Below are positions 16,518-36,864 of a stretch of DNA of 64,000 bases, piece by piece. Position 1 is the first letter of the stretch, and each line of letters starts with the position of its first letter. The stretch is from Mytilus californianus (Eukaryota). Both the position numbers and the translations under genes were made by a program. The stretch is taken from positions 806,001 through 870,000 of the forward strand of contig NW_026262696.1 in NCBI RefSeq assembly GCF_021869535.1. The letters run 5' to 3'. The notes under the pieces were generated by a model, which was not told the DNA's origin, did not search any database, and saw only the letters and a list, made by a program, of their open reading frames with translations.

Positions 16518-19500
16518 TTAATATGCCTTGGCTGTCACCTTTGTTTGAATACCGTGCACCATTGTTCCGGTGTTGGTACTTGTTTGTGTTCCTGTTGATG
16601 CGCTTGCTGGTGCATAGTTTGTCTGAAAATAAAGAAAAACAATGATAGGTTTTATCTGTTATCAGTGCTATATGGCATAAGTATAAATCAAAACTCACCA
16701 AAGGTACCATGCTTATAATGTGTTCGCTTCACGCGCGTTTTGTGTCGAAAGTTTCATCCGTGAAGTTTGAGTCAAAAATATTCAAAAGGCCAAACAAAGT
16801 ACAACTTTGAAGAGCATTGAGGACCCAAAATTCCAAAAGGAAAATCTATTACACCTTTTCACACCATTAAATGATTCCGATTACATATTTCAGTATCTAT
16901 CATTACTTCATAAACATACGGGATTGGCAAAAGCTCAAGTCTTGTATAGAAATTAATTACATCGTTGTTTTCAAAACTTTATTTTAGCCTACACATCCGA
17001 ATAAAGATTTGCAATAAAATCTAGGAAACAGATTAATGAGTTAAAAGCTTCTTTCCGAATCCTATCAATTATTCAATTGTATTAATATGTTTATGCCAAA
17101 TTGTTTATATTATTTAACTTGAATTGAATAATTAAATATGTTTACACTAATAAATTTTCCATAATACACTGACACACACACAAATAATTCAACGATAGTA
17201 GTATCATCACTTGAAAACAATTCGCTTAAAAATATTAGGCTGCATAAAATTTAAAACATTACAACTCCTTTTGTACATGGCATATAGTATATTATAATTA
17301 TAATTATTATTATTATTATTATTATTATTATCATTATCATTATTATTATCGTTATTATGATTATTATTATTTTTAATGTTCTTTATTTTCTAGCTACGTT
17401 TGCTATTCTGAATTTTCTTTGATATTTTCATAAACAAGTTTTTTTTTTGTATAAGGAACTAACTTGATCTGCTCTCGGTGACATATTACAGGATTTATTC
17501 GCTGACGGTGACATAACAATGTTTTGATCGGCCGTTGTTGACATAATAATGGTTTGATTGGCTGGCGGTGAAAATAGTTATGTTTGATTGGCTGACAGTG
17601 ACATTATAATGTTTAGATTGACCATTGGTGACATATTAATGGTTTGAACGTCCGTCGGTGACATTATAATGTTAAAATCGACCGTTGGTGTCATAACAGT
17701 GGTTTGATTGACCGTTGATGACATAATTATGTTCTGATCGACACTGGATGACATAATAACGTTCTTACCTTGATCACTGTTCCCCCTGTTGGATATTTTG
17801 GTGGTGCAGGGGCATATCCTATACAAAATGGAAAAGAGTTTTTAACTTTAACTACAATTTGTTATGATATACAATTATTTGATAAAATGATAATCTTACA
17901 CAACCAATGTATTTTTGGTTTTCAGACATTATCTTATTTTAGTTGAAAAATAATAATATTCTAGAGCTTAATTTAACCCCTTTTAATCGTAAACAGTAAA
18001 CCAAAGCAAACTAGTGGCGCATGCATGAAAGACATAAATAATGTCAACTCAGAAATGAGTGTGTATTTATTATTTCAAATGTTGAATATTGAATTTCTCT
18101 TATAAGCCCATACATTTATTTGAGAGAACATCAAGTTCAAAGGTAAATTAGAATATTGCGAATGTGACAGTTTGCAAACGGGTATTTAGTAAATATATTG
18201 TCTAGAAAGTGTAGCAATGATAATCTTAAAACATAAACTTCCTTGTACAGTCAGCACTGGCTGTATCATATGTGAGGGGCCTGATGGGTTATTTTCGTTC
18301 TTCGTGATCGGCGCATTTTCGCTATCGTAATCCGTTTTTCTACATTTTCGTGATCCTTGATCATGGAAATTTATTTTCTGTGAATCGTGATTGACAAAAA
18401 AATCAACTCGTGAATCGTGATGAGACCCCCCCCCCCCCCCCCCCCCCATCAGGCCCCTCATATGTAGATTGAAAACAAGATATATAATAATGCCTTTAAC
18501 TTACCTATTTGTGGAAATTCAAATATCACCTTGATAAAACCTGCAATAAAAAGGTAAAGATTTGAAAATAAAATTAACAGCTATGGATTGTATTTAAATG
18601 AAAATTTGGAAAAATTGAGGCATCGGTAGGGTTTTTTATATGAACAGTTTCGAGAACAAAACGAAAAAGAAAAAATAAACAAATAACAAAATGCAAAATG
18701 CAAACACAAAAAAAAAATATATCAATTAACCATATTTACATTTTACGGTGTTATGATCTTTTAATGTGCTTTAATTGTGGCAATGTTTCTAATGTAAGGA
18801 TGTCAGTATATTTTTTATATACACCTTACATAATTTTGTATCTTATTTTCCGCAAGTAAACAATAGACGTAAATGGAAATAAGACTTATTAAATTTCCTG
18901 TATCCGAATCCTTTTTCTGGAGTTACCTTCATCAGGAACGTCCAAACCTAAACATTTAGAAGCCAGAGATTGCATTCATCAAAAGATGTGATTCGTCAAA
19001 AGATGTGATTCATCAAAAGATGTGATTCATCAAAAGGTGTGATTCATGATGTGATTCATCAAAAGATGTGATTCATCAAAAGGTGTGATTCATGATGTGA
19101 TTCGTCAAAAGATGTGATTCATCAAAAGATGTGATTCATCAAAAGGTGTGATTCATCAAAAGATGTGGTTCATCAAAAGATGTGATTCATCAAAAGATGT
19201 GATTCATCAAAAGGTGTGATTCGTCAAAACTTATACAAAATCTTTATGTAAATATCTATTAATCGTGGTTTTGCTCTTTGTTGAATATGGTTGTATTTGT
19301 TTTACATTCTTGGCCTTTGGTCTTTGTTGAATAGTTTTGTCATTGTCAATCATGCTATATATCCTTATTTGTTATATCATGTTATTCATGAATGGATCAG
19401 TTATTAATTTTTATTTCAGATTTTGTTCTGATTTAAATAATTTTTGTTTGCGTTCTTTTAATTAACATTTGGAAGCATTCTGTACACATGTATTCAAAGT

Positions 19501-36864: not shown

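What the first reader, a model, noticed from the sequence alone, without database searches (positions are those of the whole stretch)
16518..36864. Unusual architecture: vWA + ~1060-residue uninterrupted helix, no COLFI/NC1 domain
354 perfect Gly-X-Y triplets (about 300 nm at 0.286 nm per residue) exceed the 338 of vertebrate fibrillar collagens, yet there is no C-propeptide. All helix introns split the Gly codon (phase 1), unlike the phase-0 54-bp modules of fibrillar genes. The helix has no interruptions (unlike FACIT and type IV) and is far longer than in type VI or mussel preCols. Automated pipelines would probably mislabel it as COL6/COL12-like.
Basis: partly seen in the sequence, partly recalled or inferred. 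Interest (0 to 1): 0.75.

Follow-up and report, generated by a model that had tools for sequence, protein, structure and literature searches.

The report
Mussel vWA-headed long uninterrupted collagen
This is a real, transcribed mussel gene for a secreted collagen with one byssus-protein-like vWA head, a 354-triplet unbroken triple helix about 300 nm long, and only a 63-residue tail instead of the usual fibrillar C-propeptide; the layout is unusual and little studied, but it is a variant of the known vWA-collagen kind.

Summary
**Observation: confirmed.**
- On the minus strand, 20 GT-AG exons (36864 to 16518) give a 1355-aa protein.
- Its parts are a signal peptide, one complete vWA domain, a two-Cys junction, 354 uninterrupted Gly-X-Y triplets (aa 231-1292) and a 63-aa Cys-free tail.
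- Every helix intron is phase 1 (G|GN). Every helix exon that is flanked by phase-1 introns on both sides is a multiple of 9 bp.

**Support from other data.**
- cDNA contigs from three runs join the last six exons exactly as modelled and run past the stop. No COLFI or NC1 domain is spliced on.
- A tandem paralogue (49.1-63.8 kb) has the same 13 helix-exon sizes.
- The 5' two-thirds of the transcript was not read directly.

**What is new here.**
- The vWA head is closest to mussel byssal PTMP1 (46% identity over the domain), not to helix-bearing COL6-type proteins (29-36%).
- The helix is proline-poor (6.7%) and 32% charged, with 59 KGD/KGE pairs.
- It shows no D-period signal. Proline falls from the N- to the C-end, and the C-end is rich in His and Lys.

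**Reading.** It is most likely a rod-like matrix or byssal linker collagen of a mussel lineage family. A byssal role is inferred, not shown.

**Context.** The literature already lists a vWA plus triple-helix protein from the Mytilus coruscus byssus, so this is a new variant of a known kind. The same first-stage scan also noted the paralogue pair and the tail motifs on this window.

The parts
36798..36864 (-). Exon 1: start codon at 36864 and the signal peptide (hydrophobic core, then ..SLA|KP). The donor is phase 1.
   Evidence: Its phase fits the next exon. No RNA joint was read for it.
34134..34432 (-). Exon 2: N-terminal half of the vWA domain, with Cys27 and the MIDAS motif D38-x-S40-x-S42.
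   Evidence: Pfam VWA E 6.7e-16, profile positions 1-86. Best solved relative is PTMP1 4cn8. Residue positions.
33474..33771 (-). Exon 3: C-terminal half of the vWA domain, with the MIDAS Asp in ITDGQ (147-151) and Cys220. It ends in phase 1.
   Evidence: Pfam VWA E 3.5e-16, profile positions 87-173. PTMP1 alignment.
32840..32938 (-). Exon 4: junction (A-C223-SIQTSNP) plus the first 8 Gly-X-Y triplets.
   Evidence: A related contig, L003, has the same layout: Cys linker, then 8 triplets.
32006..32176 (-). Helix exon, 19 triplets, phase 1 at both ends.
   Evidence: The paralogue exon 63764-63594 has the same size.
30556..30897 (-). Helix exon, 38 triplets.
29537..29878 (-). Helix exon, 38 triplets.
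28050..28499 (-). Helix exon, 50 triplets.
27227..27316 (-). Helix exon, 10 triplets.
26348..26599 (-). Helix exon, 28 triplets.
25960..25986 (-). Helix micro-exon of 27 nt, 3 triplets.
   Evidence: A 27-nt exon sits at the same rank in the paralogue, 56773-56747. No RNA joint was read. If it were skipped the helix would stay in frame at 351 triplets.
24929..25018 (-). Helix exon, 10 triplets.
24231..24446 (-). Helix exon, 24 triplets.
23703..23828 (-). Helix exon, 14 triplets.
21549..22115 (-). Helix exon, 63 triplets.
   Evidence: Pfam Collagen E 1.6e-30. Its 3' joint to 20531 was seen in an X1 cDNA contig.
20361..20531 (-). Helix exon, 19 triplets.
   Evidence: Both joints were seen in cDNA contigs.
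19512..19781 (-). Last helix exon, 30 triplets. It is His- and Lys-rich and nearly free of proline.
   Evidence: Joints seen in X1, X2 and X9. Pfam Collagen E 4.4e-19. His and Pro distribution.
18505..18540 (-). C-tail exon 1 ([12 protein letters not shown]). The GFIKVI motif is identical in the paralogue.
   Evidence: cDNA joints. Paralogue motif at 50412.
17769..17818 (-). C-tail exon 2 ([17 protein letters not shown]), carrying a PPxY-type Tyr motif.
   Evidence: cDNA joints. The paralogue has GYPPPSY.. at 50035.
16518..16622 (-). C-tail exon 3: a Thr/Ser-rich spacer, then ..[12 protein letters not shown] and the stop TAA at 16520-16518.
   Evidence: cDNA contigs run through it into the 3'UTR. 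The paralogue has ..[12 protein letters not shown] at 49188-49114, E 6e-5. No Pfam family matches it.
49114..63764 (-). Tandem paralogue, gene 2: 13 helix exons with the same sizes, plus the three conserved tail exons. Its 5' end lies beyond the window.

Best explanation
**What it is.** The gene encodes one chain of a secreted, non-fibrillar structural collagen that belongs to a mussel lineage family.

**Shown by the sequence and RNA.**
- A signal peptide sends the chain into the secretory path.
- A single vWA domain forms a globular N-terminal head. Its metal-binding (MIDAS) residues are all present: D38, S40, S42, the Thr in PATKIG, and the Asp in ITDGQ.
- Cys27 and Cys220 sit where vWA domains usually close on themselves. 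A further Cys223, nine residues before the helix, is conserved in a relative.
- Then come 354 unbroken Gly-X-Y triplets and a 63-residue Cys-free tail.
- The gene is transcribed in some libraries and absent from others of the same species.

**Inferred.**
- Three chains form a rod about 300 nm long with three vWA heads at one end.
- With only 6.7% proline and no GPP triplet, the helix is held mainly by Lys(Y)-Gly-Asp/Glu(X) ion pairs, of which there are 59. This is the same strategy as bacterial Scl-type collagens.
- Y-position proline falls from 14 in the first sixth of the helix to 0 in the last. Helix nucleation and register are therefore more likely set at the N-terminal Cys/vWA end, or by the invariant GFIKVI cap, than by a C-propeptide.
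- The vWA head docks onto another matrix protein, as PTMP1 does on collagen.
- The Lys/His-rich, proline-free C-terminal end and the Tyr-bearing tail serve as cross-linking ends.
- The tandem paralogue, with its identical exon sizes, is a likely partner chain.

**Probabilities.**
- Gene model and architecture: about 0.9.
- Rod-like matrix linker with a binding head: about 0.6.
- Byssus or foot secretion as its site of action: about 0.35-0.4.
For: **Gene model.** Phases and GT-AG sites are consistent throughout. Spliced cDNA contigs at high depth (word depth 45-812) cover the last six exons and the stop. The vWA exons are held by the same RNA-type run X1, while other runs of that species hold about none. 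The raw RNA run X14 gave zero reads on the exons.

**Domains.** Pfam VWA and Collagen match as expected.

**vWA head.**
- The best solved relative of each half is mussel byssal PTMP1 (E 5e-38 and 1e-43), ahead of collagen VI alpha3.
- Over the whole domain PTMP1 (P0024) scores 46% identity and 173 bits. The next best scores at most 40% and 124 bits. The 14 helix-bearing COL6-like hits score 29-36%.
- The vWA module is bounded by phase-1 introns on both sides, which fits exon shuffling.

**Helix chemistry.**
- 32% charged residues, 59 KGD/KGE pairs, 0 GPP triplets, 6.7% proline.
- Y-position proline per sixth of the helix: 14, 6, 4, 8, 2, 0. Imino acid content is 15.8% in the first 120 aa and 1.7% in the last 120.
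- 9 of 16 His lie in the last 150 residues (p 8e-5). The paralogue shows the same trend.

**Family.**
- The paralogue has identical exon sizes, and its X/Y identity is 30% in register against 16-19% when shifted.
- Contigs L001 and L003 from other samples show the same layout: a two-exon vWA, then a Cys linker, then 8 triplets.

**Literature.**
- A vWA plus triple-helix collagen is reported in the M. coruscus byssus proteome (PMC5597905).
- Three tandem novel collagen genes are highly expressed in the foot of Perna viridis (PMC7971044).
Against: - No tissue label could be read for the runs that express the gene, so the byssus or foot assignment is indirect.
- The maximum-likelihood vWA tree is poorly resolved around this domain (supports 0-31) and does not place PTMP1 as its sister.
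- Joints in the 5' two-thirds of the transcript were not read.
- No known trimerisation domain was identified. Trimer formation, chain partners and folding direction are all inference.
- Shell (myostracum) proteomes of Mytilus also contain vWA-type 'collagen-like' proteins (PMC4517812), so a role in muscle-shell attachment or general matrix is equally open.
- I could not search the spliced full-length protein against protein databases, so existing annotation and any named orthologues are unknown to me.
Confidence: 0.6

Rival explanations
1. It is a general connective-tissue or muscle-shell attachment (myostracum or mantle) collagen, not a byssal one. The architecture is the same but the site of action differs.
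For: Mytilus shell-layer proteomics found several VWA-type 'collagen-like' proteins in the myostracum, as well as collagen-domain proteins and Lys-rich low-complexity proteins (PMC4517812). Expression is tissue-restricted, but the tissue is unknown.
Against: The best-scoring characterised relative of the head is the byssal protein PTMP1. The His enrichment at one helix end and the PPxY Tyr motifs resemble byssal protein chemistry, though that comparison rests on my own knowledge of preCols and mfp-1.
Confidence: 0.3
2. It is a diverged fibrillar collagen that lost its C-propeptide and swapped its N-propeptide for a vWA domain.
For: The helix is uninterrupted and close to fibrillar length: 354 triplets against about 338, with a rod of about 300 nm (PMC2852846).
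Against: - All helix introns are phase 1 and split the Gly codon.
- Exon sizes run from 27 to 567 bp with no 54/45-bp pattern. Fibrillar genes are built from 54-bp units that begin with an intact Gly codon (PMC2852846).
- The cDNA has no COLFI domain.
- A stagger and Fourier analysis found no long-range charge or hydrophobic periodicity.
- Proline is richest at the N-end of the helix, not the C-end.
Confidence: 0.04
3. It is simply a mussel orthologue of collagen VI, or of a FACIT or collagen VII/XXVIII type, that automated annotation would name correctly.
For: After PTMP1, the next solved relative of the head is collagen VI alpha3. [quoted passage not shown]
Against: - The helix-bearing vWA proteins found in the library search have 5 to 20 matched vWA stretches and about 87-111 triplets broken into segments.
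- Their vWA domains are only 29-36% identical to this one.
- None of them falls in the 93-leaf clade (support 87) that holds this domain.
- The window holds no C-terminal vWA. The C-terminus is a 63-residue tail with no Pfam family on its last exon, so there is no Kunitz or other C-terminal domain. N-terminally the signal peptide is followed directly by the vWA in the model, leaving no room for FN3 or TSPN modules.
Confidence: 0.05
4. The model is an artefact: a pseudogene, or exons of two genes joined by mistake.
For: Joints of the 5' 14 exons were not read from RNA.
Against: - The 4068-nt frame is open across 20 canonical exons.
- The 3' third is spliced and highly covered in three runs.
- The paralogue keeps the same 13 exon sizes despite 70% X/Y divergence.
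- The vWA exons are present in the same RNA-type run.
Confidence: 0.03

Closest known systems
PTMP1 (proximal thread matrix protein 1) of the Mytilus byssus, PDB 4cn8/4cn9/4cnb
   Same: It is the closest characterised vWA domain: 46% identity and 173 bits over the whole domain. Each half scores E 5e-38 to 1e-43 for the whole chain (two vWA domains summed), or 2e-21 and 1e-18 against domain A1 alone. The N- and C-terminal Cys and the MIDAS residues line up. The PTMP1 N-terminus also carries PPPY motifs like the tail here.
   Different: PTMP1 has two tandem vWA domains and no long triple helix. This protein has one vWA and 354 triplets. The ML tree does not resolve them as sisters.
Collagen VI chains and invertebrate COL6-like proteins
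   Same: They combine vWA domains with a triple helix. Collagen VI alpha3 is the second-best solved relative of the head. From my own knowledge, not checked here, COL6A1 and COL6A2 are also tandem genes.
   Different: COL6-type hits have many vWA domains on both sides of a helix of about 87-111 triplets that is interrupted. Here there is one vWA, 354 uninterrupted triplets and no C-terminal vWA.
Fibrillar collagens (clades A to C)
   Same: An uninterrupted major helix of nearly the same length (about 338 triplets, a 300-nm rod; PMC2852846).
   Different: This gene has no COLFI C-propeptide, no VWC/TSPN N-propeptide and no 54-bp phase-0 exons. It shows no D-period signal, very low proline, and a proline gradient running the opposite way.
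Mussel byssal preCols (preCol-D, -NG, -P)
   Same: They are collagens from the same animal group. His enrichment at a molecular end and Tyr-bearing termini resemble preCol cross-linking ends (my knowledge of preCols; the data here are).
   Different: By my knowledge, preCols have a much shorter helix, flanked by silk-like, elastin-like or Gly-rich blocks and by separate His-rich terminal domains, and they have no vWA. None of those flanks is present here.
Bacterial collagen-like proteins of the Scl1/Scl2 type (a functional analogy only)
   Same: A globular N-terminal head followed by an uninterrupted, hydroxyproline-independent helix rich in charged residues. Here the helix is 32% charged with 59 KGD/KGE pairs. 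The comparison rests on my knowledge of Scl proteins.
   Different: There is no homology. This is an intron-rich animal gene with a vWA head, and its helix is several times longer.
M. coruscus byssal vWA plus triple-helix protein ALA16011.1 (Qin et al. 2016, cited in PMC5597905)
   Same: It is reported as a Mytilus collagen with both VWA and triple-helix repeats, found in the byssus. It may be the orthologue or a family member.
   Different: The sequence and the paper were not available to me. Helix length, continuity and tail could not be compared.

Membership tests
Fibrillar collagens | C-propeptide (COLFI domain) that selects and registers the chains | tested here: not met
   cDNA contigs end in a 63-aa Cys-free tail and the 3'UTR. 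The last exon matches no Pfam family. No ORF of 90 aa or more in the 16.5 kb downstream carries a domain.
Fibrillar collagens | Uninterrupted major helix of about 338 triplets | tested here: met
   354 uninterrupted triplets. Definition from PMC2852846.
Fibrillar collagens | Helix exons derived from 54/45-bp units that begin with an intact Gly codon (phase 0) | tested here: not met
   All helix introns are phase 1. Exon sizes are 27, 90, 126, 171, 216, 252, 270, 342, 450 and 567 bp.
Fibrillar collagens | Charge and hydrophobic periodicity that supports D-staggered fibrils | tested here: inconclusive
   A simple stagger score and Fourier analysis found no long-range period. This method is crude, and absence of a signal is weak evidence.
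Collagen VI family | Short helix of about 335 residues, with interruptions | tested here: not met
   The helix here has 1062 residues and no interruption. COL6-like library hits have about 87-111 triplets in segments.
Collagen VI family | vWA domains on both sides of the helix | tested here: not met
   Only one vWA (two exons) exists in the window. The C-terminus is a 63-aa tail.
Collagen VI family | vWA domains that group with collagen VI vWA domains | tested here: not met
   Identity to helix-bearing COL6-like proteins is 29-36%, against 46% to PTMP1. No helix-bearing protein falls in the supported 93-leaf clade around this domain. The tree is otherwise poorly resolved.
FACIT collagens (XII, XIV, XX, XXI, XXII) | TSPN and FN3 modules, with short interrupted COL1/COL2 helices | tested here: not met
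   In the model the signal peptide is followed directly by the vWA, and the helix is a single 354-triplet block. The 5' joints were not read from RNA.
PTMP1-type byssal matrix proteins | vWA domain of the PTMP1 sequence type with an intact MIDAS | tested here: met
   It is the best solved and best full-domain match. DxSxS, Thr and Asp are all present.
PTMP1-type byssal matrix proteins | Two tandem vWA domains with no long collagen helix | tested here: not met
   There is one vWA, followed by 354 triplets.
PTMP1-type byssal matrix proteins | Presence in the byssus, with collagen binding | not testable with these tools
   Run labels are coded and carry no tissue information. Binding needs a bench assay.
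Byssal preCols | Central helix flanked by silk-like, elastin-like or Gly-rich blocks and by His-rich terminal domains | tested here: not met
   No such flanks are present. The only resemblance is a His enrichment inside the last 150 helix residues.
Collagens in general (triple-helix formers) | Long (Gly-X-Y)n stretch in a secreted protein | tested here: met
   Pfam Collagen matches at E 1.6e-30 and 4.4e-19. A signal peptide is present. Actual trimer formation was not tested.

The most novel reading that the evidence does not exclude
Together with its tandem paralogue, which keeps exactly the same helix length, this chain forms a heterotrimeric 300-nm collagen. On this reading the collagen is poor in hydroxyproline and stabilised by salt bridges. 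It is nucleated from the N-terminal vWA/Cys end or by a minimal GFIKVI cap, not by a C-propeptide. It would also be an unrecognised load-bearing or cross-linking component of the mussel byssus. That would make it an independent evolutionary route to a fibril-length collagen without COLFI.
Probability: 0.2. Interest if true: 0.7.

Novelty: new variant of a known kind. Interest (0 to 1): 0.5.

Why it matters
Animal collagens of fibril length are thought to depend on a C-propeptide for chain selection and on hydroxyproline for stability. This is an expressed animal collagen of that length with neither. It has a 63-residue tail and a helix with 6.7% proline, stabilised on paper by Lys-Asp/Glu pairs as in bacterial collagens.

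If it folds as predicted, it would be a natural model for three things:
- trimerisation without a propeptide;
- design of charge-stabilised helices;
- recombinant collagens that need no prolyl hydroxylase.

Its PTMP1-type head links it to the mussel byssus toolkit, where the parts list is still incomplete. The pair of paralogues with identical exon sizes offers a test of what fixes collagen length.

Tried and rejected
1. **Whole-library HMMER search with vWA exon b.** The top 150 hits were dominated by multi-vWA proteins. No full-length vWA plus long-helix protein appeared. Only three short fragments reached 57-58% identity.
2. **Word search with the same exon.** It gave 2 candidates and no hit. 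That tool cannot see full-length relatives of a 99-aa query, so the blank says little.
3. **Full-length searches not possible.** The spliced 1355-aa protein has no reference and could not be handed to any database tool. I therefore ran no full-length search, no look-up of existing annotation and no structure prediction.
I used 279 domain rows. The 8 rows dropped by the tool are P0004_398, P0005_1809, P0012_1311, P0027_1192, P0039_420, P0055_419, P0066_2626 and P0082_413. The tree is unresolved near the query (supports 0-31). The only usable result is a 93-leaf clade (support 87) with no helix-bearing protein. PTMP1 is not placed as sister even though it has the best pairwise score.
5. **D-period test.** The stagger score and the Fourier transform of charge and hydrophobicity showed only the 3-residue period.
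6. **Search for internal duplication among helix exons.** The best in-register X/Y identity was 0.41 over 34 positions, which is not convincing.
7. **DNA comparison of the two genes' 3' flanks.** Only scattered repeats matched. Conservation of the tail is visible only at protein level.
8. **Raw RNA run X14.** It gave no reads on exons, only on intronic repeats.
9. **Papers not held.** Qin et al. 2016 and DeMartini et al. 2017 are not in the library. My recollection that collagen VI helix exons also split Gly codons could not be confirmed and is not used as evidence.
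Full report

The window has no N runs. All long Gly-X-Y runs between 19.5 and 33 kb lie on the minus strand. Every run is preceded by AG with the G shared with the first GG, and every run ends in G|GT. Each intron therefore splits a Gly codon after its first base. Walking each run in frame and taking the last in-frame donor gives 19, 38, 38, 50, 10, 28, 3, 10, 24, 14, 63, 19 and 30 triplets.

I assembled a complete model of 20 exons, all GT-AG, with a 4068-nt CDS and a 1355-aa product. It has these parts:
- a signal-peptide exon starting at the ATG at 36864, with a phase-1 donor;
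- two vWA exons (34432-34134 and 33771-33474);
- a junction exon (32938-32840);
- 13 pure helix exons;
- three tail exons (18540-18505, 17818-17769, 16622-16518).

The two vWA exons hit the two complementary halves of Pfam VWA, and helix exons hit Pfam Collagen. The last exon hits nothing.

**RNA evidence**

Contigs of three runs join 21549|20531, 20361|19781, 19512|18540, 18505|17818 and 17769|16622. The skipped parts end in CT..AC on the + strand, which is GT..AG on the gene's strand. The contigs run through the stop into the 3'UTR. X9 is on record as poly-A RNA. X1 and X2 are recorded only as probable RNA, but they carry the spliced form.

Word depths of these contigs were 45 to 812. No joint skipping a helix exon was reported. 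The short tail is therefore real, and no COLFI, NC1 or other domain is spliced on in these transcripts.

A raw RNA run from the genome project (X14) gave no reads on any exon. Several other runs of the same species label hold almost none of the sampled words. Expression is therefore restricted, but the run labels are coded and I cannot name the tissue. The vWA exons are held by the same run X1, with a share of 0.44 against an exonic fraction of 0.62. This supports the claim that they belong to the same expressed gene but does not prove it. The joints of the 5' two-thirds were not read.

**The paralogue**

A second gene lies on the same strand, with helix exons at 63764-50652. It has exactly the same 13 exon sizes. 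Its X/Y positions are only 30% identical in register, against 16-19% in shifted registers, and there is no indel in 1038 residues. Its three tail exons keep the motifs GFIKVI, GY.P.PP.Y-type and H.I.TKV.AKAY-stop.

This agrees with two first-stage notes on this window (s1-335341, s1-335422), which I re-derived independently. It also supports the exon boundaries that RNA did not cover, including the 27-nt exon. Because all helix exons are symmetrical (phase 1 at both ends) and multiples of 9 bp, skipping any of them would still give an unbroken helix.

**What kind of vWA head**

Against all solved structures, each vWA half finds mussel byssal PTMP1 first. The whole-chain E-values are 5e-38 and 1e-43, which sum PTMP1's two vWA domains; against domain A1 alone the values are 1e-18 and 2e-21. 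Collagen VI alpha3 comes next, and integrin I domains are far behind. The N- and C-terminal Cys and the exon a/b boundary fall at equivalent places.

A whole-library HMMER search with exon b returned 2042 hits. Re-scoring the best 150 with the complete domain gave this ranking:
- PTMP1 (P0024): 46% identity, 173 bits;
- the next best hit: at most 40% identity and 124 bits;
- the 14 proteins that also carry a helix: 29-36% identity.

Those helix-bearing proteins are COL6-like, with many vWA domains and about 87-111 triplets in segments.

The ML tree is poorly resolved around the query and does not make PTMP1 its sister. It does place the query in a 93-leaf clade (support 87) without any helix-bearing protein. 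I therefore call the head 'PTMP1-type' by score, not by phylogeny.

The vWA module is bounded by phase-1 introns on both sides, as are all the helix exons. This is the classic arrangement for exon shuffling. No other vWA exon exists in the window.

Two short genomic contigs from other samples (L001, L003) have 58%-identical vWA halves. In L003 a Cys linker exon followed by exactly 8 triplets comes next, and the Cys-x-Gly-Ala-Cys junction is conserved. The family therefore extends beyond this locus, but I cannot name the organisms.

**Helix chemistry**

The helix composition is K 157, D 118, E 55, R 10 and P 71 of 1062 residues. Other measures:
- 32% of residues are charged.
- Lys fills 132 of 354 Y positions, and Asp or Glu fill 141 X positions.
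- There are 59 Lys(Y)-Gly-Asp/Glu(X) pairs, 63 G-[DE]-[KR] triplets and no GPP triplet.
- Y-position proline, the site of hydroxylation, falls from 14 in the first sixth to 0 in the last.
- Imino acid content is 15.8% in the first 120 residues and 1.7% in the last 120.
- His is concentrated at the C-terminal end: 9 of 16 in the last 150 residues, p 8e-5. The paralogue has 5 of 12, p 0.02.
- No long-range charge or hydrophobic period was found.

**How it most likely works**

The sequence shows directly a secreted chain with an intact-MIDAS vWA head, a Cys next to the helix start, an unbroken 1062-residue helix and a small Cys-free tail.

The rest is inference:
- Three chains form a rod of about 300 nm with the heads at one end.
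- The helix relies on ion pairs rather than hydroxyproline.
- Nucleation or registration occurs at the proline-rich N-terminal end near Cys223, or through the invariant hydrophobic GFIKVI segment that abuts the helix. This is unlike the C-to-N folding of fibrillar collagens driven by the C-propeptide (PMC2852846).
- The head binds a matrix partner, as PTMP1 binds collagen (the title of Suhre et al. 2014, cited in PMC5597905).
- The Lys/His-rich end and the four tail tyrosines are cross-linking sites.
- The paralogue with identical exon sizes suggests either co-assembly in one trimer or a supramolecular packing that fixes length.

**Site of action**

Earlier notes of this scan call the genome the California mussel (s1-330630). 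I did not verify this, but it fits the PTMP1-type head.

Three published observations bear on the site:
- A vWA plus triple-helix collagen from the M. coruscus byssus proteome. The same paper says such collagens are absent from the Pinctada, Crassostrea and Lottia genomes (PMC5597905).
- Three tandem novel collagen genes highly expressed in the Perna viridis foot (PMC7971044).
- Many highly expressed 'collagen-like' transcripts in the Mytilisepta foot (PMC5549309).

These make a byssal or foot role the leading guess, at about 0.35-0.4. Mytilus shell myostracum also contains vWA-type collagen-like proteins (PMC4517812), so a role in attachment or general matrix is nearly as likely.

**Comparison with known families**

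It is not a fibrillar collagen: no COLFI, no 54-bp phase-0 exons, no D-period signal. It is not a collagen VI or FACIT member, because helix length and continuity, vWA number and position, and vWA similarity all fail. It is not a preCol, having none of the flanking blocks, and it is not PTMP1, having one vWA plus a long helix.

Split Gly codons are a recognised feature of collagen IV genes (PMC5395295). They mark a non-fibrillar origin rather than something new.

It is best described as a new variant within the vWA-collagens. The head is related to a byssal matrix protein. The helix is as long and unbroken as a fibrillar one, but its chemistry resembles bacterial collagens.

**Verdict**

The finding is a real and unusual but not unprecedented architecture. 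Interest is moderate (0.5). The main gaps are the unread 5' joints, the unknown tissue, the lack of any full-length database comparison, and the absence of experimental evidence for trimer formation.

Noticed in passing
window 49114-63764 (minus strand): A tandem paralogous collagen gene with identical helix exon sizes and conserved tail motifs. Its vWA and 5' end lie beyond the window's end. The intergenic and intron DNA of the two genes is not alignable, so the duplication is old.
   Followed up: partly
window 45932-46436 and 46448-46919: Two adjacent, very regular tandem arrays (45 bp x 11.2 at 97% matches; 51 bp x 9.3 at 95%) lie between the two collagen genes. They generate long spurious ORFs on both strands.
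   Followed up: no
window 18974-19229 and 17497-17763: Tandem repeats inside the introns of the C-tail region: a 17-bp unit x 15.6, and a 30/90-bp unit. Read-laying also skipped 17286-17384 and 18417-18457 as repeats.
   Followed up: no
window 63807-63992 (minus strand): A reverse-transcriptase fragment lies in the intron upstream of the paralogue's first in-window helix exon. It matches Pfam RVT_1 at E 2.5e-5, 24.5 bits, below the gathering score.
   Followed up: partly
window 16794-16990, 18173-18566, 22113-22300: The raw RNA run X14 has reads only on these intronic patches, most with loose ends and many variant letters. They are probably transcripts of dispersed repeats rather than of this gene.
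   Followed up: no
window 16599 and 16516: The cDNA contigs differ from the window by a 6-nt deletion in the Thr/Ser-rich tail spacer (X1) and a 6-nt insertion just after the stop (X1, X2). These are in-frame length polymorphisms or species differences in the spacer.
   Followed up: no
L003:371-676 and about 1160-1260; L001:101-490 and 978-1451: Short genomic contigs from other public samples carry 58%-identical vWA halves with the same two-exon split. In L003 a Cys linker exon with 8 triplets follows. The organisms are unknown.
   Followed up: partly
window 15693-15734: Another first-stage note reports a hammerhead ribozyme here, about 0.8 kb downstream of the collagen gene's stop. I did not examine it.
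   Followed up: no
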